From positions 62,001-126,000 of the IMG/VR virus record IMGVR_UViG_3300035181_000357: a stretch of DNA of 64,000 bases; one strand, 5' to 3'. Shown piece after piece: positions 10,451 through 54,370 of the stretch (positions are counted from its first letter, which is position 1; the number at the start of each line of letters is the position of its first letter). The notes under the pieces were generated by a model that did no database searches, was not told the origin of the DNA, and saw only the letters and a program-made list of their open reading frames with translations. The translations under genes and the position numbers were made by a program.

Positions 10451-13400
10451 TTAAGCCTTTGTGGTAACTTTGAGGGTTACGTTGATGTACAGTAGAGAGA
10501 AGACAGGCTTGAAGGCTACTGTGACATCTAGGACAGTAGGATCAGACTCGTTACGAGTAACTTGTAGACCCTTATAGGCTTCAATAATTTCTTGTTGAAC
10601 GAAGTTCTTCATGACAGAGTTCATCACGATCGTAACATCATTAACAAGAGCTCCGAGGTTCTTTCTTCCGATGAATTGATTGAGTTCCTTGCGGATCTTC
10701 TGTCTTACTTCATCAGAGATTGAGGTATTGGTTGGTTCCTGCGTGATAGGATTGCTCATATCAGTGGTTAGGTAGTGGCGAACAGTGAAGGCACCATTAT
10801 CCTCTATCAATACAGAGACTCCATCAGTTGCGATCTGATCCATGGTTGGATCGTCATATCTCTGGAGGAGACGCTCGAATCCGACCATCTTCTTACGAGT
10901 AAGAGTGGTAGCAGAATCGATTGCTGGATTGCCCTTCATACCTGCCATTGCAGCAGCTAGGAACTCACCACCAACAGCGTACTCAGAAGACTTACCATCA
11001 ACTTCTAGGCTGATGATTGCACCTGCTGGATATACAGCGACGACACGCTCTGACTTGATACTTTGAGCTCTTGATCTTGCATCTACTGGAGAAGTTCCAG
11101 TGCTGAAGCCTACAAAGCCCATAGCCTCTCCCTTATTACGAGGAGCAGCTTGTGTATTGAGGTGCTTGGCTAAGAATTGTTGAACACTCTTCTCAGTGTT
11201 TAAAGGCACAATAACAGAAGCCTTTGTGGTTCCACCAGTGATTGGACGAGCTAGAGAAGCAATACCATCGATGAAAGTCTGGTTAGATGCAATTGCTGAA
11301 CCAACTTGCTTCTTGAGCTGCATGCATCCGAGAGTGGTTGTACCATTCAGGACAGCAAGGCGAGCAGCGAGGGATAGCTTGTTTTCTACAGTAGGATTAC
11401 CATAAGCAGCATATACATCAGACAGGTTCGTGAAGATCTTTAACTCATAATCCTTATCGGTCTTTGCAGTCTTGAAGGATACATAGTAGAACTCACCAAC
11501 AGTTGGTTCTGCACCAGCCTTATTATAGGTGTTGATGAAGAGGTAATCATTTGCAGCCATTCCAAAGGTGGTCGATACCTTGGTACGGATACCAGGGATT
11601 GCAACAACTGGAACAGTAGAAGTGACATAGTGGACGCTCTTGCTTACGACGAATACTAGAGTGTCACCAGGAGCATAACGATAAGAGATTGGAGCGGTTA
11701 GACCATAGTCAGCAATGTTTGAGGCATTTGGATCCACGATCGTGACAGAGAATCCAGTGACAGAGTCGTTGTAAGTCTGACCGAGGTACCCGATACCAGC
11801 AGATCCACCAGTTACTAGGTTGGAAGATACAGTGTACTTGCTGCTGAATGCAGTATTTACATCAGGAGTACCACCAGCGAAGTTCAACTTAGCAGAAGTA
11901 GTAGCATTAGTAGAACCAGTACCAGTTAGTGTAGCAGTGATTAGTCCACCAGCAGTGGTTACTAGAGCACCAGCACCTAATGCAGCGTTTGCAGTGAAGA
12001 GGGCTACGATCTGGGTAAGGGTTCTTACAGTACCAGCACCATCAGTGATCTCTACAGAGACATCGTTACCAACGATAGTTAATGCAGCTGCATCTAATGT
12101 ATTTCCAGTGTTCTTGAACTGGATGGATACTGGAGTTACAGCAGAATCAAACTTATTGAATGTTCTGAAAGTGATACCAGTCTGAGCAGTAGTGTTAGTT
12201 GCCTGAGTTCCAGGAGTCTGAAGATAGCTCTCTCCAGTTGTAGCGAAGGTTAAGGTTACGACCTCTTCCTCGGCACCAGCAACAATCTTGGCATCAGAGA
12301 AAGTATTAGGCCACAGAATACCACCAGAGGAGGTGAAGACTGGGTCAGCTACAGTGTGAGTAGATTGATTGACAGTTGGGATCTGAAGATCGTTCTTATC
12401 CCAGATAGAGTAAGAACCCTGTCCGGTTACGCCAGGAACTTGTACCTTGACCTTGAACTTGTTATCAGCAAGACGAGACTTGAAGTATGTTACATAGACA
12501 CTTCCAGTTGCAGGAGGATTGAAGAGAGTTACTCTCTTATTTGCTCCATCAACTGAAGAGATGGTTACAGGAACTAGAGCAGCAGTTGGAGTAGCTCTGG
12601 TGTAGGCTTTTACATAAGCAGGATTATCGGTTACTCTTGATAGACCAGATCCAGTAGTAGGAGCATCCTTAAGAGTAAATACGTTGTTGATTCCATTCAC
12701 TGAACCAGTTGCTAACTCAAGGTAGACCTTATCATCCACGAGAGTGGCGATGATGTGAGAAGCATCGAAGGCGGTGAATCCACTAGATTGTAGACCAGCA
12801 GAAGCTGATACGGAAGCTCCCCACTGAATTTTATCACCCTCTAGGACATAGTCGATAGTGTTGATGAAGTCATCTCTATCAGGGGAGAATCCACACTTTA
12901 AGATCTCAGTAATATTTTCAGCAGGTAGGAAGTCGAAAGTATCCTGATAGGTGTTGGTGAAATAGGTAGTTAGTAAGGTCGAACCAAAAGCTACATCCCC
13001 ATTTAGAGTTATTAAACCATTTAAACCATCTACTGACGTAACACCAACGGCAGAACCGTTAACAGTTACTTTGACGTGAGCAGGGAGGTTGGTTACAACA
13101 CCACCGTTTGAACCATCTACGATAGGTAGGTTCTTGACCTTGAAGACCTTGCTAGTGCTCTGGCCTTCTCCACCAACGAATGGTGCAGAAGTAGCAGCGA
13201 CAGCAGCAGAACCACCACTAAGAGTGGCAGTTACCTGGATCAAACCACCAGAGGCAGTGATGATTCCAGTGTTGATTAAGGTAGCGAGTTCAGCGATAGT
13301 TCTATGAACAGGAACGGCAACGGTTCCCTTGACTAATTCGATTGAGATAACATCTGTACCCTGCCCACTGATGGCTAGAGTGTCAGATTTAGGAGCACCG

Positions 13401-13981
13401 AGGGTCTCAGTGAAAGCTACGGTAACATTATTCCCTGCGAAGCCTGGCTTCTCTAACTTGAGAGACAGGTTACCAGCCTGGGCTACTAGGGTTGCAAACT
13501 TAGGAATCTGGACGCTGAGATCTTCATCAGTTACTAAGTCATCACTTCTTTTGAAGAAGTAACTAGTTCTTAGATCAGAACCAGGGAGGAGAATAACATC
13601 GATTAGGAATTTTCCTGTGGCGCCATCTAAGGTCGAGACACTAATAGGATTCCCATCAACGGTTACAGAGATATCAGTTGGTGTGTTTGTAGTAGTTCCA
13701 CGACCATCCCCATTAACAATTGGGAAGTAGGCAACCTGGAATTCTCGCTTAACACCATCGACTTGGTCACTTAGATTTTCTAAGACCTTTCTGTCGTCTG
13801 ATGAAGAACTAGAACCTCTGTGGAGTTCCGCATTATTAGAGGTTTTAAATTCTTCTCCTTCTCCGAGAAGGACAGTGATACGAGCATCTCCGAAGAGTGA
13901 AGTACCAGCATCTTCGGTAGTAAGAGTAGTGTAGACACCGGGTTGGGCGTATTGATCAAAAAGAGCCATGCTTTTCTCCAT
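10451..13981 (-). CDS. Tail sheath protein with large repeated insertion domains
   Basis: N-terminal YAQPGVYT; C-terminal sheath signature (FLAAAMAG, FTVRHYLTT, FIGRKN, VTVAFKPVFSLLYINVT). Confidence 0.9.
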   Translation of the reverse strand: MEKSMALFDQYAQPGVYTTLTTEDAGTSLFGDARITVLLGEGEEFKTSNNAELHRGSSSSSDDRKVLENLSDQVDGVKREFQVAYFPIVNGDGRGTTTNTPTDISVTVDGNPISVSTLDGATGKFLIDVILLPGSDLRTSYFFKRSDDLVTDEDLSVQIPKFATLVAQAGNLSLKLEKPGFAGNNVTVAFTETLGAPKSDTLAISGQGTDVISIELVKGTVAVPVHRTIAELATLINTGIITASGGLIQVTATLSGGSAAVAATSAPFVGGEGQSTSKVFKVKNLPIVDGSNGGVVTNLPAHVKVTVNGSAVGVTSVDGLNGLITLNGDVAFGSTLLTTYFTNTYQDTFDFLPAENITEILKCGFSPDRDDFINTIDYVLEGDKIQWGASVSASAGLQSSGFTAFDASHIIATLVDDKVYLELATGSVNGINNVFTLKDAPTTGSGLSRVTDNPAYVKAYTRATPTAALVPVTISSVDGANKRVTLFNPPATGSVYVTYFKSRLADNKFKVKVQVPGVTGQGSYSIWDKNDLQIPTVNQSTHTVADPVFTSSGGILWPNTFSDAKIVAGAEEEVVTLTFATTGESYLQTPGTQATNTTAQTGITFRTFNKFDSAVTPVSIQFKNTGNTLDAAALTIVGNDVSVEITDGAGTVRTLTQIVALFTANAALGAGALVTTAGGLITATLTGTGSTNATTSAKLNFAGGTPDVNTAFSSKYTVSSNLVTGGSAGIGYLGQTYNDSVTGFSVTIVDPNASNIADYGLTAPISYRYAPGDTLVFVVSKSVHYVTSTVPVVAIPGIRTKVSTTFGMAANDYLFINTYNKAGAEPTVGEFYYVSFKTAKTDKDYELKIFTNLSDVYAAYGNPTVENKLSLAARLAVLNGTTTLGCMQLKKQVGSAIASNQTFIDGIASLARPITGGTTKASVIVPLNTEKSVQQFLAKHLNTQAAPRNKGEAMGFVGFSTGTSPVDARSRAQSIKSERVVAVYPAGAIISLEVDGKSSEYAVGGEFLAAAMAGMKGNPAIDSATTLTRKKMVGFERLLQRYDDPTMDQIATDGVSVLIEDNGAFTVRHYLTTDMSNPITQEPTNTSISDEVRQKIRKELNQFIGRKNLGALVNDVTIVMNSVMKNFVQQEIIEAYKGLQVTRNESDPTVLDVTVAFKPVFSLLYINVTLKVTTKA

Positions 13982-16722: not shown

Positions 16723-18927
16723 CTATCTCCTAGATTTTATCAATTTCGATTTTCTATTAAATTTCTGTTCATCTTTATTTATATGATTCTTAATCAGGGC
16801 CATGAAATCGCTAAATATCTCAGGATCTTGATATCTGTAGGACAGATAGCTGTTAAAGGCAGCTGAGTTATTAGATAGCTCTATATACTTAGATTTTTCT
16901 ATCAATTCTAGAATATCTTCATCTGTGTACCCAACATTTCTCAATTCAGATACGGCCTCACGAGCATAGGCATGCATCTCTTCCGGAAGTTCGAAGTAGT
17001 AACCCTCATTACGGGCCTCTAAGTATTCTTCATCCAAAAGAGTCTTACCTTCATCATGATCCTTCTGATGTTGAAGTTCATGAGATAGGTATTCCTCCAC
17101 CCCATCCTGGAACTGATTCCATCCTTCGAAAGTAGACAGTTTCCCTCTCTTAGTTGGATCTATATATAATATGACCCACCTGTTCTTTACCTGAATCTTT
17201 GCACTATCTAAGAATCCTTTATTTGGACCAGTATGTGCTTTCCTGACCTCTAACTTGGATATACCAACAACAGGCTTCATCCCTTGTAAAATTGCGTTAA
17301 GATCCTTCATAAACTCTATATTGGATTTCTTAGATGCTCTTACGATCTGATTCTTGACCTTGGCAAGGAAGATATGAATATCTTCTGCGAAAGAGGCTAT
17401 CTTTACCTTTGTGATACCTTTATCTCCACCAGCACTAAATTCAGCATCTTTTATCTTGAGATCCTTATCCTTAAACAAGTCTGGGAATTTCTTTATATAT
17501 TTATCAGCTAACCCTGGTTTTAGATATGCAATAGTTAGATGTGGACTATACTTTGGAAATTTGCTGACATTATCTGGATAAAGTTCTTTCAGTGTCTTTT
17601 CTGTATCTACTAGTTCCTTAGATTTCTCTATCTTTATAATCAGGACGTCCCTGCCATCATTTTCAAACTTATTCAGACCCTCTAAAGTTACTGTCTTTAA
17701 CCCAGATTCTTTAACTGCTTTTTCGAGGCGTCCATCATCTTCCTTTTCAAGAATGCCATACAAGAGAGTGATATGAGTCTGGTCTTCCACACCCTCTTCA
17801 TCCAAATCTTCTTTATCTATATTAGCTTTAATGAAATCTTGAATAGACTTAGTTATATCATCGTCTAATGTCAACTGTGTATTGGAATACTTATACTCTA
17901 CACCTTTCTTTGCTGTCTTAACACTTTTACCTGTCACTTCTCGAGCTCCATACTTTTCTTTAAAAGTCTTCAATTCATCTCGATCTATCGTAACAGCTAT
18001 CTCAGTCTCACCCATATCTCGTAACACAGCCCAACGATGACGACCATCTCCAAACATGATATTCTTACTAGGAGTCAATCCAAGATTAGGAGGATCAATA
18101 GGAGTTTCAGGGTAATCTACCAGCCACTGTTTAAATTTCTGATATCTAGTACCGATAGCAGCACCAGATCCATTCTCTCCTACATAGAAATTCTCATCTT
18201 TTGAATAAGAGGCTTCCACTTTCTTGACATCTACTATAACCCGGATCTCATCTCTGCGGGGGATTCTTGGTTGATATGTTTGAGAACTCATCTTAGTAAG
18301 GGCTTCAGATACCAGCTTCAGGAACTGTTTTTGTACTTTAGGAGATGCTTCATTAATGTAGTGATTCATCCCGTTATCAATTTTTGCAATCTCAGATCTA
18401 TTCAACATACTGTTGATATCTCTACCATCTCCCATAGCTTTATCACGAAGGATCTTTGCAACTTCATAAGCATGGGCAGCTATTTCCTGAGTGTCTTTAT
18501 AATAATCAGCTTCTGATCCTTTATCCTTTGGTGTTCTTGCGACAGTTTCTAGATCCAACCATGAGTATTTATATCTATCCACTAGGGGTTTATTAGCCAG
18601 CGCTACATTAGCCATCTGTCCAATATGTACAATCTCGTGATATATAGTCTTTCTAAGGTTTTCACCCTCTAACTCATCTTTTATCTCTATGATATATCTA
18701 AAGACTCTTTCTTTACCACCAGTTGCAAAAGCACGGGCAACACCTGCGTAGTCTATCCCTTTTATGAATTCTACTTTTGATCCTTTATCAACAACGTAGT
18801 CTTGCTCTGCCATCATTTCTTTCAGATTCTTATCTATAGAGTCTCTAATCATCTTTGGGTTTGAATAGTCACTAATAGTATTTATGACTCTGTTAGTAAA
18901 TTTATTAGTCCTGTCTGCTAGTCTCAT
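16723..18927 (-). CDS. Polyvalent protein: HExxH zincin, ParB/Srx-like, 2H phosphoesterase (Acb1/2'-5' RNA ligase-like), second HExxH zincin
   Basis: YHEIVH...EIAAHA; FGDGRHRWAVL; THITLLYG and SPHLTIAY; SHELQH...EMHAYA. Confidence 0.75.
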   Translation of the reverse strand: MRLADRTNKFTNRVINTISDYSNPKMIRDSIDKNLKEMMAEQDYVVDKGSKVEFIKGIDYAGVARAFATGGKERVFRYIIEIKDELEGENLRKTIYHEIVHIGQMANVALANKPLVDRYKYSWLDLETVARTPKDKGSEADYYKDTQEIAAHAYEVAKILRDKAMGDGRDINSMLNRSEIAKIDNGMNHYINEASPKVQKQFLKLVSEALTKMSSQTYQPRIPRRDEIRVIVDVKKVEASYSKDENFYVGENGSGAAIGTRYQKFKQWLVDYPETPIDPPNLGLTPSKNIMFGDGRHRWAVLRDMGETEIAVTIDRDELKTFKEKYGAREVTGKSVKTAKKGVEYKYSNTQLTLDDDITKSIQDFIKANIDKEDLDEEGVEDQTHITLLYGILEKEDDGRLEKAVKESGLKTVTLEGLNKFENDGRDVLIIKIEKSKELVDTEKTLKELYPDNVSKFPKYSPHLTIAYLKPGLADKYIKKFPDLFKDKDLKIKDAEFSAGGDKGITKVKIASFAEDIHIFLAKVKNQIVRASKKSNIEFMKDLNAILQGMKPVVGISKLEVRKAHTGPNKGFLDSAKIQVKNRWVILYIDPTKRGKLSTFEGWNQFQDGVEEYLSHELQHQKDHDEGKTLLDEEYLEARNEGYYFELPEEMHAYAREAVSELRNVGYTDEDILELIEKSKYIELSNNSAAFNSYLSYRYQDPEIFSDFMALIKNHINKDEQKFNRKSKLIKSRR

Positions 18928-45705: not shown

Positions 45706-46617
45706 CTACTGCAGTTCTTCAGAAATATCATACGTTTCTGGGACAGAATCTTGAACCCTTATCTCTTCCAACTCTACTCTCTGGAGTAATGAAATACCAG
45801 AAGTATCTGAATTTGCACTTGAATCAAAAATTTGATCGATGATCCTTTTCTCTTCTCTTATAAAAGATGTCTCCATCAAAACCGGATCATCCTCTAAGAA
45901 GGATAGAGCTCTTAGACCACATCGCAGACTGTGATACTTCTTGTCATCACCACAACAGGTTTCTAACTCTTCCATGAAACCTTCTGCATCCTCTTTTGTC
46001 TTAGCTAGGAAAGTCATCCCAACCTTTCTACCATCCTCTATAATCTTATACTTTAACCACGACGTATCCATCGTAGTTATCCTTTGGGATTCCAGGATCT
46101 CAAACTGTTCCCTGATTCTTTCTCTTATAATATCTGAAGTGGAATGCATATACATCTCAGATGGGATAGGAGGATTCTTTGCCTGAACTTTCTTCAATTG
46201 GAGAATCAAAGAATATGTGTCTACCAGAGTTGGATCTTGATCTTTTGGTAAATTCTTTATCTCGAAAGAGAGTCTTGATTCCAACTCTTCCCTTGTCAAG
46301 AACAATAGAAGCATATCTCTTCGAAGTCTTGCATTAGGAAAGTCATACAAGTCATTAAATCTAGAGACTAGCTTATCTCTAACATCTTCTAGAGTTTTCT
46401 TTAGAAGACTACTATTTTTCAGTAGTAATTTTCGTCTATAGATTAGGTCATTTACTTTTGGAAATACGACATCTCGATAGTGAAGAGCTACACATTGAAG
46501 TGTTGTCTCTTTTATCTCTTTGCCTGAATCTAACCTAAATCTCAAACCAAACCTCTTCCTACTTAATACGGGATTAAGTATGACCTGTAGTACAAATTTA
46601 ATCGATTCAAACCTCAC
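45706..46617 (-). CDS. Orphan protein directly downstream of the structured RNA; candidate partner of the TnpB-like locus
   Basis: 303 aa, basic N-half, acidic C-terminus; no confident family. Confidence 0.55.
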   Translation of the reverse strand: MRFESIKFVLQVILNPVLSRKRFGLRFRLDSGKEIKETTLQCVALHYRDVVFPKVNDLIYRRKLLLKNSSLLKKTLEDVRDKLVSRFNDLYDFPNARLRRDMLLLFLTREELESRLSFEIKNLPKDQDPTLVDTYSLILQLKKVQAKNPPIPSEMYMHSTSDIIRERIREQFEILESQRITTMDTSWLKYKIIEDGRKVGMTFLAKTKEDAEGFMEELETCCGDDKKYHSLRCGLRALSFLEDDPVLMETSFIREEKRIIDQIFDSSANSDTSGISLLQRVELEEIRVQDSVPETYDISEELQ

Positions 46618-46626
46618 AATTTTAAA

Positions 46627-46846
46627 CTCTGAAGACCAGAGATTGCCTAGTATGCACCCAAGAGATAAGTCTCGGGGTTATTGATCAAACCCAGCTGGCT
46701 CACATACGTGGCCACTGTAAAGCCGCAGCAGCTTGGGAAAGAATCAACGATACAGACTTGTTGATTCCAACCACCTCCTTAGATACCACTCTTGGATATC
46801 CTCAGTTTGTTTAACTGAAACTTTGAATAAAGGAGACTCAATAACC
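46627..46846 (-). ncRNA. Multi-stem structured RNA (about 220 nt)
   Basis: Nested helices: 46676-84/46838-46, 46775-80/46830-35, 46741-48/46760-67, 46690-96/46730-37 plus small hairpins; G-U pairs favour minus strand. Confidence 0.65.
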
Positions 46847-46857
46847 AAATGGATCGT

Positions 46858-46877
46858 TTATTATGATTATTGTTATT
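46858..46877 (-). repeat. 20-nt exact copy of 48246-48265 (candidate guide)
   Basis: TTATTATGATTATTGTTATT on + strand at both positions. Confidence 0.95.
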
Positions 46878-46965
46878 TTCTTTCGACGTTGCGTTTGGGA
46901 CAAAGTCCTCAGCAGAACCAAGGATGAGTAGAGGGAGGCACCTTAGGTGCTTCTAATTCTGCATA
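46878..46965 (-). ncRNA. Candidate omegaRNA-like scaffold overlapping the 3' end of the TnpB-like gene
   Basis: GCAGAATTAG/TTGGTTCTGC stem enclosing GCACC-TAA-GGTGC, then GGAC-TTT-GTCC, then the 20-nt repeat. Confidence 0.45.
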
Positions 46966-48075
46966 TCCTAGTTCCATACACGAAGAAGCTAGAACCTGAC
47001 TTCTAAGCCTGTTCTTTCCTCTTCGTTTTGAGATGATACCAGTATCCTGGATAATCTTAAACGCGATAGCACCTTCCGCCTGTCGCGATCTCCCAATCCT
47101 TTTGATGATCATATCGATATCGTCAAGATTGTTCTTAGTGTCTTTCTTATGTTTACTAAGGAAGACGAATCTACAATTCTTAGAAATCTCTTTAAAAAGA
47201 GAATTAAGATACTTGTAGTGGTTCTTTCGAACCCTATCTGCTTTGACACTGATCTCTAATTCCTTACCGGTATCGAGGCTCAGAACCTTTATACTTAGAT
47301 GATCGTTGTCAGCAGCAATACCAATATCTAAGGAACCAGAAGGTGTAGTATCAGTTGCTTCGACGGATTTCAAGACCATATAATAATATCTGTGATCTCG
47401 TCTTACAACCTTTATACTCTTAACATCTGCCTTTTTAATACTGGATGGTATGGTTACAGAAGTTTTTAATTTCTGTAACCTGGTTTCTAGTTCTTTTATC
47501 AGGTTCTTGGTCTTGGTCTCATATCTACTAAATGTGATATGGATAGGATCTTCATCCTCTTCATAATCCCAAGACATCTTACTCAATCTCGAGGTCTCTA
47601 ATTCAGTCTTCGATTTCAATTCCATGCTAATCTTACTAAGTTTATTCTGTAAGATTCGTCTCGTTTTCCCAGTGGCTACATCAGAACGTTCCTGGTTTCG
47701 CTTCATTTCATAGCGTCTCTTGTTTTCGATTCGCTTCAGATTCAGATATTCGGTTTCAAGTTTCGTGTTCAGAGTTTTTAGTCTTTTGTCTGTTTTCGGT
47801 CGCAGGTGTCGTTGGGTGAGTTTACGTTTACGTTGGTAGTCTTTCAGGCATATCTCGACGATCTCTCTATCCCGTACTAACATGGAGGCTACATCTATGC
47901 ATAGCGCATTGGGTTCAGAAGAAAAAGATTCGGGGGTTAGGTTCTGGATTCGGCCACCAGAAGCGTCTATACCCACTAGACAATTCCACACCATTCTGTA
48001 GATCAAGAACTGCTGACCATAGTCGCCAGTTCTAACAAATGATCTTCTTACAACAGATGACATGAACAATCTCAC
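46909..48075 (-). CDS. Probable nuclease-dead TnpB/Cas12f-derived protein
   Basis: 388 aa, very basic; RMVWN helix, KSIKVVRRDHRYYYMV, DIGIAA..LSLDTGK, HYKYLNSLFKEISKNCRFVFLS, RSQVLASSCMELG..EAP occur in TnpB order with RuvC D/E/D apparently replaced. Confidence 0.5.
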   Translation of the reverse strand: MRLFMSSVVRRSFVRTGDYGQQFLIYRMVWNCLVGIDASGGRIQNLTPESFSSEPNALCIDVASMLVRDREIVEICLKDYQRKRKLTQRHLRPKTDKRLKTLNTKLETEYLNLKRIENKRRYEMKRNQERSDVATGKTRRILQNKLSKISMELKSKTELETSRLSKMSWDYEEDEDPIHITFSRYETKTKNLIKELETRLQKLKTSVTIPSSIKKADVKSIKVVRRDHRYYYMVLKSVEATDTTPSGSLDIGIAADNDHLSIKVLSLDTGKELEISVKADRVRKNHYKYLNSLFKEISKNCRFVFLSKHKKDTKNNLDDIDMIIKRIGRSRQAEGAIAFKIIQDTGIISKRRGKNRLRSQVLASSCMELGYAELEAPKVPPSTHPWFC

Positions 48076-48137
48076 AAGTTAGGAACTGATACACTCAAGG
48101 TCAAGTAAATTCTTAATTCTACAAGAAGTTATCGATA

Positions 48138-48412
48138 TCCTGTATAGTAAGAACAACAAGGATGACCGTAACCTGTAACAACCTGTATTCTTAATAATTA
48201 TAATAGATAACTGATAATAAGTAACAATTATAACTTATAATGATGTTATTATGATTATTGTTATTAGGAATTAAGGACATGTTGTACACCTGTATCTAAT
48301 TGTTGTTGTAGCTGACAGGTTGTGTTCTCAATTTTGGACAATTTATACTTTCTGAATCATGTTTTTAAAGTCTCTCTATTACCAGGTACTTAAGAACACT
48401 TCATACACAGGT
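48138..48412. promoter_or_regulatory. Divergent control region and candidate replication origin
   Basis: Only strand switch in the window; about 80-nt AT-rich core 48187-48266; ACCTGT at 48171, 48181, 48288 and inverted ACAGGT at 48315, 48407. Confidence 0.55.
48246..48265. repeat. 20-nt exact copy of 46858-46877 (candidate target)
   Basis: Identical 20-mer, same orientation. Confidence 0.95.

Positions 48413-51124: not shown

Positions 51125-54370
<3,246 letters not shown>

What the first reader, a model, noticed from the sequence alone, without database searches (positions are those of the whole stretch)
46909..48075. 388-aa protein reads like TnpB with all three RuvC catalytic residues lost
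By-eye alignment to TnpB consensus in correct order: QQFLIYRMVWNCL (fG..RfvyN.aL); KSIKVVRRDHRYYYMV (WED strands); DIGIAADN..LSLDTGK (vGIDlG...sdG, Asp to Ala); HYKYLNSLFKEISKNCRFVFLSK (flhkls..lv....iviEd, Glu lost); RSQVLASSCMELG (RD.NAA.Ni..G, Asp to Ser); terminal EAP. The Zn finger is absent, the bridge helix looks shortened, and there is a long K/R coiled-coil in the N-half. An intact ORF that has lost catalysis suggests a binding-only function.
Basis: inference. Interest (0 to 1): 0.75.

Follow-up and report, generated by a model that had tools for sequence, protein, structure and literature searches.

The report
Diverged dead-TnpB-like phage protein with RNA
A conserved gene of a small group of very large phages encodes a protein with the architecture of the RNA-guided nuclease TnpB but a degraded active site; a conserved structured RNA follows it, and a 20-letter sequence beside that RNA matches a site in the gene's own control region, which suggests a new RNA-guided gene switch.

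Summary

The fold is TnpB-like and the Zn finger is absent.

Three findings are new:
- The gene is a single-copy, syntenic core gene in six large phages. It heads the replication module and diverges from the structural module.
- A structured RNA of about 230-290 nt with strong covariation (z about -12) lies directly downstream.
- An exact 20-24-nt sequence sits between the gene and that RNA and recurs once, upstream in the gene's control region. The two copies co-vary from phage to phage.

Best reading, at about 45% confidence: a nuclease-dead, RNA-guided DNA binder of the TldR kind that targets its own divergent promoter region. The guide orientation is unresolved and no expression data exist.

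The parts
46909..48063 (-).
   Evidence: homologues align from MSxVRRS. (model order: N-terminal strand, helical REC-like region, beta-hairpin, RNase H-like beta-beta-beta-alpha-beta-alpha-beta-alpha). (TnpB/Cas12f best full-length matches). (dN/dS 0.2-0.3).
47059..47091 (-). Hairpin embedded in the codons for R325-F335 (GRxRQAEGAIxF). It includes a 17-nt stretch that is invariant at the nucleotide level in all six phages.
   Evidence: identical-codon fraction 0.74 here against 0.4-0.5 elsewhere. (pair 100-123 of alignment A7 occurs as A-U, G-C and U-A through coupled amino-acid changes).
46890..46908 (-). Covarying hairpin immediately after the stop codon (GGAC-UUU-GUCC), followed by the conserved CCAAAC-GCA.
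   Evidence: (pairs 332-347 of A7 show compensatory changes).
46878..46889 (-). Linker of fixed length (12 nt in five of six loci) but variable, purine-rich sequence, lying between CCAAAC-GCA and repeat copy 2.
   Evidence: One search found no match to it elsewhere in the phage genome or in the loci.
46858..46877 (-). Copy 2 of the 20-nt element AATAACAATAATCATAATAA, 31 nt after the stop codon and 11 nt before the structured RNA. This is the guide candidate.
46615..46846 (-). Core of a conserved multi-helix structured RNA on the gene's strand, closed by a long-range helix (GGUUAUUGA with UCAAUAACC).
   Evidence: 60 pairs, 29 with double-sided compensatory changes. (consensus energy -32.2 against -5.5 +/- 2.2 for shuffled columns, z -12; reverse strand -16.0). 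(no Rfam family).
46552..46579 (-). Covarying hairpin directly followed by the Shine-Dalgarno-like AGGAAGAGG of the next gene.
   Evidence: pairs 456-476 of A4..
45706..46545 (-). Conserved downstream gene of unknown function (about 279 aa), with a TTG start that is conserved across loci. Public gene calls start it too late.
   Evidence: One search gives only a weak DUF3150 lead.
48246..48265 (-). Copy 1 of the 20-nt element, 182 nt upstream of the start codon, in the 395-nt region between this gene and the divergent structural module. This is the target candidate.
48266..48286 (-). 5' flank of copy 1: a T/C-rich TAM-like pentamer (TTCCT), and a -10-like GTAT(A/G)AA-type motif at a fixed 15-16 nt distance in all six loci.
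   Evidence: Interpreting these as a promoter and a TAM is inference.

Best explanation
The ORF encodes a very diverged relative of TnpB/Cas12f. It has a WED-REC-RuvC architecture, has lost the zinc finger, and keeps only one of the three RuvC catalytic residues. It has been domesticated as a fixed, single-copy core gene in a small clade of phages larger than 200 kb.

Like the known nuclease-dead TnpB derivatives (TldRs), it most likely binds DNA without cutting it, guided by an RNA encoded immediately 3' of its own gene. The candidate guide is the 20-24-nt AT-rich element that starts about 31-47 nt after the stop codon. Its only other occurrence in the genome is an exact copy upstream of the gene. 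That copy lies 15-16 nt downstream of a -10-like motif, in the control region shared with the divergently transcribed structural module.

Binding there would repress, or otherwise tune, the gene's own leftward replication and nucleotide-metabolism operon, the rightward structural operon, or both.

What is shown: the fold resemblance, the conserved synteny, the structured RNA, and the co-varying repeat pair.

What is inferred: loss of nuclease activity, binding of the RNA by the protein, the guide role of the 20-mer, and the regulatory outcome.

What is unresolved: whether the scaffold is the ORF 3' end plus the post-stop hairpin (guide at the 3' end, as in every known TnpB-type RNA) or the large downstream RNA (guide at the 5' end, which would be unprecedented for this protein family).
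For: Fold:
- All full-length matches are TnpB, Fanzor2, or Cas12f/k/i/m/Phi.
- The top AlphaFold DB cluster is a Cas12f1-like TNB protein (E 2e-5, full length), followed by IS605 OrfB and TnpB clusters.
- ESM-Atlas feature neighbours are TnpB-type clusters.
- hhalign places the WED hairpin and RuvC-I in register.
- P0006 carries a Zn ribbon between beta-5 and the last helix and gives a sub-threshold TnpB-related NCBIfam hit.

Selection and context:
- dN/dS is 0.2-0.3.
- The gene is single-copy and syntenic in six phages.

RNA:
- 60 consensus pairs, 29 of them compensatory.
- z = -12 against shuffled columns, with the gene's strand preferred.
- There is a hairpin inside the ORF whose nucleotides are invariant even at synonymous sites.

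Guide and target:
- Every locus has an exact 20-24-nt match between the two sites, against a shuffled maximum of 12-15 nt.
- These are the only two copies in 210 kb.
- Four sequence variants exist across the six phages, and each is mirrored in both copies.
- The edges are sharp. The 5' flank is T/C-rich at copy 1 and purine-rich at copy 2.
- No other segment of the RNA has a consistent match anywhere.

Literature: TnpB omega-RNAs derive from the 3' part of the gene's own mRNA, with a 5' TAM on the target (PMC10278001). TldRs keep a downstream guide RNA and bind promoter-proximal targets (10.1101/2023.11.30.569447).
Against: - There is no significant sequence similarity to any TnpB family. The hhalign probability is only 19%.
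- The model rests on six sequences (pLDDT 75, pTM 0.46).
- The 20-mer abuts neither candidate scaffold directly: there is a 12-nt linker on its 5' side and 8-13 nt on its 3' side. Known TnpB/Cas12 guides directly abut the scaffold.
- The ORF 3' region as a whole shows no covariation support.
- One locus (L005) lacks the T/C-rich flank.
- Only six loci, and about three independent co-variation events, exist.
- No RNA-seq run was listed, so no transcript ends are known.
- The protein-RNA complex prediction was not run by the tool.
- The invariant E330, D340 and E369 could form a rearranged active site, so 'nuclease-dead' is not proven.
Confidence: 0.45

Rival explanations
1. The two 20-mers are twin cis-regulatory DNA sites (promoters or operators) read by one protein factor, possibly this protein binding double-stranded DNA directly. 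The downstream structured RNA is then an independent non-coding RNA, or the 5' leader of the next operon, transcribed from copy 2.
For: - Both copies are followed within about 8-13 nt by a G-T-T-A-T-like start of conserved sequence in several loci.
- The conserved RNA begins at a nearly constant distance after copy 2.
- Phage promoters for dedicated polymerases can be identical over about 20 nt (general knowledge).
- The last hairpin of the RNA abuts the ribosome-binding site of the next gene, as a leader would.
Against: - No phage RNA polymerase or sigma factor is detectable in the 210 kb held, though the record is only 69% complete.
- A promoter type used only twice in a genome is unusual.
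- Protein-read sites rarely remain 100% identical over 20-24 nt with sharp edges in six of six diverged genomes.
- The element is not palindromic.
- The distance from copy 1 to the start codon varies from 91 to 345 nt.
Confidence: 0.22
2. The protein is not a TnpB derivative. It is a RuvC/RuvX-type RNase H-fold domain fused to a coiled coil, acting on DNA junctions or in replication. The resemblance to TnpB is only a shared common fold plus helices.
For: - Foldseek's best hits are RuvX, RuvC, poxvirus resolvase and integrase cores.
- The gene heads a replication and nucleotide-metabolism module.
- The RuvC-I Asp and several other acidic residues are invariant.
Against: - Only TnpB, Fanzor and Cas12 align over the whole length, including the N-terminal strand, the helical region and the beta-hairpin.
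- hhalign matches the WED hairpin, which resolvases lack.
- P0006 has a Zn ribbon at the TnpB-specific position.
- The positions of the second and third catalytic residues are substituted.
- This reading leaves the adjacent RNA and the repeat pair unexplained.
Confidence: 0.12
3. The 20-24-nt direct repeats are recombination cores (att-like, or a relic target duplication) bounding a 1.4-kb cassette that carries the gene and its promoter. The protein would be part of a mobile or excisable element.
For: - Identical cores with sharp edges and unrelated flanks are typical of attL/attR pairs.
- TnpB relatives come from transposons.
- Two of the four metagenome assemblies break contigs close to the repeats.
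Against: - The gene sits in the same position in all six phages, whose proteins are only 27-47% identical.
- It is single-copy.
- No joint skipping the cassette appears in four DNA runs, although contigs do not show rare forms.
- No recombinase family is detected in the protein.
- The AT-rich repeats at low coverage explain the contig breaks.
Confidence: 0.06
4. The protein is an active RNA-guided nuclease with a rearranged catalytic site, using D246 with E330, D340 or E369. It cuts a target that is not in the phage genome, for example host DNA or a competing phage.
For: - The RuvC-I Asp and three further acidic residues are invariant or nearly so.
- Alternate positions of a catalytic residue are documented in TnpB and Fanzor (10.1101/2023.11.30.569447).
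- The 12-nt variable linker sits where a canonical guide would start and has no phage target.
Against: - P0006 has Asn at the RuvC-I position.
- An exact, uncut target-like copy sits 1.4 kb away in the same genome in all six phages. That would be suicidal for an active nuclease using the 20-mer as its guide.
Confidence: 0.1

Closest known systems
TldR (TnpB-like nuclease-dead repressors: fliC_P-associated in temperate phages, oppF-associated in Enterococcus)
   Same: - TnpB-type architecture with degraded RuvC residues and a lost zinc finger.
- A conserved non-coding RNA encoded directly downstream of the gene.
- A short sequence at the RNA locus that exactly matches a promoter-proximal DNA site with a different, T/C-rich 5' flank.
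- Phage-encoded.
   Different: - TldRs are recognisable TnpB homologues by sequence (they were found in a TnpB alignment). This family is invisible to Pfam, NCBIfam and PHROGs.
- TldR guides are 9-16 nt and directly abut the 3' end of a roughly 100-nt scaffold. Here the 20-24-nt element is separated from both candidate scaffolds by linkers, and the adjacent RNA is much larger.
- TldR targets host genes in trans. Here the only match is in cis, in the gene's own control region.
- The host phages here are large, contractile-tailed phages rather than enterobacterial prophages.
TnpB of IS200/IS605 and IS607 (e.g. ISDra2 TnpB, PDB 8h1j/8exa)
   Same: - Best structural match over the full length.
- The WED hairpin and RuvC-I motif align in register.
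- The RNA is encoded at and after the 3' end of the gene.
   Different: - No transposon ends, no TnpA, single-copy and syntenic.
- The Glu and second Asp of the D-E-D triad are not conserved.
- No zinc finger (except the remnant in P0006).
- No significant sequence similarity.
dCas12f-sigmaE RNA-guided transcription (PMC13472631)
   Same: A nuclease-dead TnpB/Cas12f-lineage protein that uses an RNA-DNA match near a transcription start. Guide and target co-vary.
   Different: No sigma factor is adjacent or detectable in the genome. In that system the guide lies at the 3' end of the scaffold.
Cas9 autoregulation by a natural long tracrRNA (Workman et al. 2021, cited in PMC13472631)
   Same: An RNA-guided effector that targets its own promoter region in cis to set its own level.
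   Different: A different protein family. That system uses a partial match to avoid cleavage, whereas here the nuclease itself appears inactivated.
RuvC / RuvX / poxvirus Holliday-junction resolvases
   Different: Resolvases are single-domain dimers with a full acidic active site. They lack the N-terminal 240 residues and any associated RNA.

Membership tests
TnpB (IS200/IS605 accessory protein) | Significant match to OrfB_IS605 / Cas12f1-like_TNB / HTH_OrfB Pfam models or to TnpB NCBIfam models | tested here: not met
   No hit in Pfam or NCBIfam for the window protein. The only signal is a sub-threshold TIGR01766 hit (E 0.12) for P0006. hhalign against a TnpB profile gives a probability of 19%.
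TnpB (IS200/IS605 accessory protein) | WED-REC-RuvC bilobed architecture | tested here: met
TnpB (IS200/IS605 accessory protein) | Intact RuvC D-E-D catalytic triad | tested here: not met
   The RuvC-I Asp is retained. The Glu position is S303 by topology, or Q339 by an alternative motif match. The Asp-III position is the invariant S355, or is absent. The mapping of positions II and III is inferred, not aligned.
TnpB (IS200/IS605 accessory protein) | Zinc-finger (TNB) domain between RuvC-II and RuvC-III | tested here: not met
   Absent in five of six members. P0006 keeps a CxxC...CxxxH insert there that scores as a Zn ribbon below threshold.
TnpB (IS200/IS605 accessory protein) | Transposon context: LE/RE ends, TnpA nearby, multiple copies, variable locations | tested here: not met
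   One copy in the genome, no other OrfB_IS605 match, and identical synteny in six phages. TnpA itself was not searched for.
TldR (nuclease-dead TnpB-like repressors) | Two or more of the three RuvC catalytic residues mutated, often with loss of the ZnF/C-terminal RuvC segment | tested here: inconclusive
   Two of three appear substituted and the ZnF is lost. However, residue equivalence for II and III is inferred, and the invariant E330, D340 and E369 are unplaced.
TldR (nuclease-dead TnpB-like repressors) | Conserved guide-RNA scaffold encoded downstream of the gene, with the guide at its 3' end | tested here: inconclusive
   A conserved structured RNA and two further covarying hairpins are present. 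However, the 20-mer lies 5' of the large RNA and 21 nt after the post-stop hairpin, so neither arrangement is canonical. No Rfam match and no expression data.
TldR (nuclease-dead TnpB-like repressors) | Guide complementary to a promoter-proximal genomic target flanked by a 5' TAM that is absent at the guide locus | tested here: met
   There is an exact 20-24-nt match in the upstream control region of all six loci. It co-varies between phages, and the 5' flank is T/C-rich at the target and purine-rich at the guide locus in five of six loci. This is sequence evidence only; TAM function is untested.
TldR (nuclease-dead TnpB-like repressors) | RNA-dependent DNA binding and transcriptional repression | not testable with these tools
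   Needs RIP-seq, ChIP-seq and reporter assays.
RuvC/RuvX Holliday-junction resolvases | Single-domain RNase H-fold dimer with a complete acidic active site | tested here: not met
   The fold is shared over residues 244-371 only. A 240-residue N-terminal region is present, and the positions of the later catalytic residues are substituted.
IS110/IS1111 bridge-RNA (seekRNA) recombinases | N-terminal DEDD RuvC-like domain plus a C-terminal Tnp domain with a catalytic Ser, and a bridge RNA with two binding loops | tested here: not met
   The RuvC-like domain is C-terminal here. There is no DEDD_Tnp_IS110 or Transposase_20 hit. IS110 models match only residues 244-372.

The most novel reading that the evidence does not exclude
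A previously unrecognised, sequence-orphan branch of the TnpB/Cas12 lineage has been fixed as a core regulator in very large lytic-type phages. It uses a new, large scaffold RNA with the guide on its 5' side, the opposite polarity to every known TnpB/Cas12 RNA. It binds a site in its own divergent control region and so acts as an RNA-programmed switch between the replication and structural gene modules.
Probability: 0.2. Interest if true: 0.9.

Novelty: new variant of a known kind. Interest (0 to 1): 0.72.

Why it matters
Nuclease-dead TnpB derivatives (TldR, dCas12f) were found only recently, and they were found by sequence similarity to TnpB. This family is invisible to sequence searches, so such exaptations may be much more common than surveys suggest, including in the core genomes of large phages.

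A self-targeting, RNA-programmed regulator in the control region between early and late modules would be a new kind of phage developmental switch. If the large downstream RNA proves to be the scaffold, the guide polarity would be new for the whole TnpB/Cas12 lineage.

The system is compact (384 aa) and comes with natural co-varying guide/target pairs, which makes it directly testable.

Tried and rejected
- **Sequence libraries.** Pfam, PHROGs, NCBIfam, PADLOC and a profile search of PDB sequences gave nothing significant.
- **hhalign.** Against a single TnpB (insQ) it found nothing. Permissive and forced-global runs were reliable only over the WED hairpin and RuvC-I.
- **Family size.** Exhaustive phmmer against 1.8 billion representatives, plus word-based searches, found only five homologues.
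- **More loci.** Scans of IMG/VR and JGI metagenomes with protein patterns found none. A scan with the most conserved RNA block found none in IMG/VR and three chance hits inside bacterial cell-division genes in the metagenomes.
- **A wasted search.** My third homology search, on insQ, returned only near-identical E. coli copies. I built the TnpB profile from ten annotated phage TnpBs instead.
- **Rfam.** No family matched in or around the RNA.
- **Other guide candidates.** The variable 3' tail of the RNA and the 12-nt linker have no consistent or significant match.
- **ORF-overlapping scaffold.** There is no global covariation, only one embedded hairpin.
- **Excision test.** No joints appeared in four DNA runs, but these are contigs only.
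- **Expression.** No RNA run was listed.
- **Protein-RNA complex prediction.** The tool does not fold this kind of complex, so it is evidence neither way.
- **P0006 model.** Confidence was too low (pLDDT 62) to use.
- **Fold search.** It was closed on three attempts before it ran.
Full report
**The observation.** The minus-strand ORF at 46909-48075 exists and is intact: 388 aa from a GTG. All homologues align from the ATG four codons further in (MSSVVRRS, 48063), so the product is probably 384 aa. A public gene call shortens it to 222 aa. The window lies in a 210.6-kb IMG/VR virus record estimated at 69% complete. The phage has a tail sheath, a DnaB-like helicase, a DinG-like helicase, a class II ribonucleotide reductase and GyrB.

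**Is it a TnpB relative?** By sequence there is almost nothing.
- Pfam, PHROGs, NCBIfam and PADLOC give no significant hit.
- A family profile finds no TnpB or Cas12 among PDB sequences.
- hhalign against a single TnpB (E. coli insQ, taken from the annotated K-12 record) finds nothing.
- Against a profile of insQ plus ten phage TnpBs, the only hit has probability 19% and pairwise E 0.0013. It is in register, though: the family's beta-hairpin (KSIKVVRRDHRYYYMVLK) and D-I-G-I-A fall on TnpB's WED hairpin and G-I-D-x-G.

Structure gives the real support. An AlphaFold2 model from the six-sequence alignment (pLDDT 75, pTM 0.46) has this order of elements:
- an N-terminal strand;
- a helical region with two very long helices;
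- a beta-hairpin;
- a complete RNase H-like beta-beta-beta-alpha-beta-alpha-beta-alpha domain.

Further support:
- The best AlphaFold DB cluster is a Cas12f1-like TNB protein (E 2e-5, 3-381 against 4-375), followed by IS605 OrfB and TnpB clusters.
- ESM-Atlas feature neighbours are TnpB-type clusters.
- The most divergent homologue, P0006, has a CxxC...CxxxH insert that scores as a Zn ribbon. It lies between beta-5 and the last helix, where TnpB has its zinc finger.

**Catalytic residues.** It is conserved in five of six members and is Asn in P0006.

For the other two positions no tool gave a residue-level alignment. By topology, beta-4 is R298-F-V-F-L-S303, with Ser or Asn where TnpB has Glu, and the last helix begins R354-S355-Q-V-L-A359, with an invariant Ser where TnpB has Asp. 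An alternative motif match reads I-I-Q339-D340 as TnpB's V-I-E-D, and L-A-S-S-C-M-E-L-G-Y-A-E-L as TnpB's post-RuvC-II lid. That would mean a C-terminal truncation, as in TldRs.

Either way the Glu and the second Asp are missing. The invariant E330, D340 and E369 remain unplaced, so loss of activity is likely but not shown.

**Selection and context.** dN/dS is 0.22 for the closest pair (dS about 1) and 0.2-0.3 for distant pairs. The gene is single-copy. Only five homologues exist in collections of 5.8 and 1.8 billion proteins. All lie on large phage contigs from sediment, microbial-mat, wastewater and similar metagenomes, and all have the same layout: a structural module transcribed one way, and this gene, a conserved roughly 280-aa unknown, RNR and GyrB transcribed the other way. 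This is a domesticated core gene, not a transposon.

**A conserved structured RNA.** The 340-480 nt between this gene and the next are conserved at the nucleotide level even between phages whose proteins are 27% identical.
- RNAalifold predicts 60 pairs, and 29 keep pairing through changes on both sides.
- The consensus energy of the core is -32.2 kcal/mol, against -5.5 +/- 2.2 for column-shuffled alignments (z -12) and -16.0 for the reverse strand. Together with the many G-U pairs, this places the RNA on the gene's strand.
- No Rfam family matches.
- Upstream of it, a hairpin right after the stop codon covaries.
- Inside the ORF, the codons for G-R-x-R-Q-A-E-G-A-I-x-F form a hairpin. Seventeen of its nucleotides are invariant in all six phages, synonymous sites included, and one of its pairs changes A-U, G-C, U-A through coupled amino-acid changes.
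- The rest of the ORF 3' end shows no covariation.

**A co-varying 20-mer pair.** Starting 31-47 nt after the stop codon, every locus has a 20-24-nt AT-rich element (AATAACAATAATCATAATAA in the window, 46858-46877). It recurs exactly once, upstream of the gene (48246-48265). Shuffled controls reach only 12-15 nt, and the whole 210-kb genome holds no third copy even with two mismatches allowed. Four sequence variants occur among the six phages, and each is mirrored exactly in both copies, with sharp edges.

Copy 1 lies 15-16 nt downstream of a -10-like GTAT(A/G)AA motif in all six loci, and it is preceded by TTCCT, TCCCT or TTCTC in five of them. Copy 2 lies exactly 12 nt after the conserved CCAAAC-GCA in five loci, and it is preceded by purines. 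Nothing else in the RNA region has a consistent match anywhere.

**Mechanism.** In TnpB systems the guide RNA derives from the 3' part of the gene's own mRNA, the guide follows the scaffold, and the target carries a 5' TAM that the guide locus lacks (PMC10278001). TldRs are TnpB derivatives with a degraded D-E-D triad and often no zinc finger. They keep a downstream guide RNA and sit on promoter-proximal targets (10.1101/2023.11.30.569447; 10.64898/2026.09.22.753285). A dCas12f variant even drives transcription with a partner sigma factor (PMC13472631).

The simplest unifying reading is that this protein binds an RNA carrying copy 2 and is thereby directed to copy 1. Copy 1 lies in the control region between the replication and structural modules, so binding there would tune its own operon, the divergent one, or both.

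The geometry is not canonical on either side. If the scaffold is the ORF 3' end plus the post-stop hairpin, then a 12-nt variable spacer intervenes before the 20-mer. If the scaffold is the large downstream RNA, then the guide is on the 5' side, which is unknown in this lineage. I could not resolve this: no RNA run was listed, and the complex predictor does not handle protein-RNA pairs.

**Rivals.**
- *Twin promoters or operators (0.22).* The constant distance to the RNA and a recurring GTTAT-like start fit this. However, no phage polymerase or sigma factor is detectable, and exact identity in six of six loci is more than protein-read sites usually show.
- *A resolvase-like RuvC protein unrelated to TnpB (0.12).* This fails to explain the full-length matches, the WED alignment, the Zn ribbon, the RNA and the repeat pair.
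- *An active nuclease with a rearranged active site (0.10).* This is hard to reconcile with an exact target-like copy 1.4 kb away in every genome.
- *att-like recombination cores (0.06).* This fits the sharp edges, but not the fixed synteny or the absence of any skipping joint in four DNA runs (contigs only).

**Verdict.** The detail 'all three residues lost' is wrong for the first Asp. The more interesting content is what surrounds the gene: a new structured RNA and a co-varying guide/target-like pair in cis. This is best classed as a new variant of the known kind 'nuclease-dead TnpB-derived RNA-guided regulator'. Whole-model confidence is about 0.45.

Noticed in passing
window 45706-46617 (-); L002 9533, L004 9380, L005 9575, L007 3854: The conserved gene after the RNA most likely starts at a TTG (window 46545), 6-8 nt after an AAGAGG-type ribosome-binding site. 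Protein-level conservation extends well upstream of the ATG starts used in the public gene calls. Its function is unknown; the only lead is a weak DUF3150 match.
   Followed up: partly
L004 13438-16972; L006 10302-14786: In related phages the GyrB gene (L004) and genes in the RNR/GyrB position (L006) carry intein-splicing domains. A DUF7487 gene is inserted next to them in L004 and L005. The window's own GyrB and RNR have neither.
   Followed up: no
window 47059-47091 (-): A 17-nt stretch inside the ORF (the codons for Q-A-E-G-A-I) is identical in all six phages at every synonymous site. This points to a nucleotide-level function, such as an RNA hairpin, a processing site or an internal promoter, on top of the protein code.
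   Followed up: partly
window 51125-54370 (+): A 1081-aa structural-module protein has a run of nine glutamines near its N-terminus and long low-complexity Gly/Ser/Ala stretches. It is probably a tape-measure or internal virion protein, and it is conserved in all related loci.
   Followed up: no
window 16723-18927 (-): A 734-aa protein has a 2'-5' RNA ligase superfamily (2H phosphoesterase) domain at residues 374-481.
   Followed up: no
window 10451-13981 (-): An unusually large (1176 aa) protein whose only recognisable part is a phage tail-sheath C-terminal domain at its very end.
   Followed up: no
window 46889-46891 and 48233-48282: Logan contigs of two metagenome runs (X3, X4) break close to both copies of the 20-mer. 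The cause is probably low coverage of AT-rich sequence, but raw reads would be worth checking for heterogeneity there.
   Followed up: no
window 48064-48245 (-) and alignment A5: The 5' leader between copy 1 and the start codon contains further blocks conserved across phages (for example ...CTATACAGG... and ...AAATTAAGAACTTATTGAACC...GGTATCAA...). Their length varies from 91 to 345 nt and their role is unknown.
   Followed up: no
window 46909-48075 (-), public gene call P0001: The public gene prediction for this ORF starts at an internal Met (222 aa) and misses the whole N-terminal WED/REC-like half. Such truncated calls would hide the family from architecture-based surveys.
   Followed up: yes
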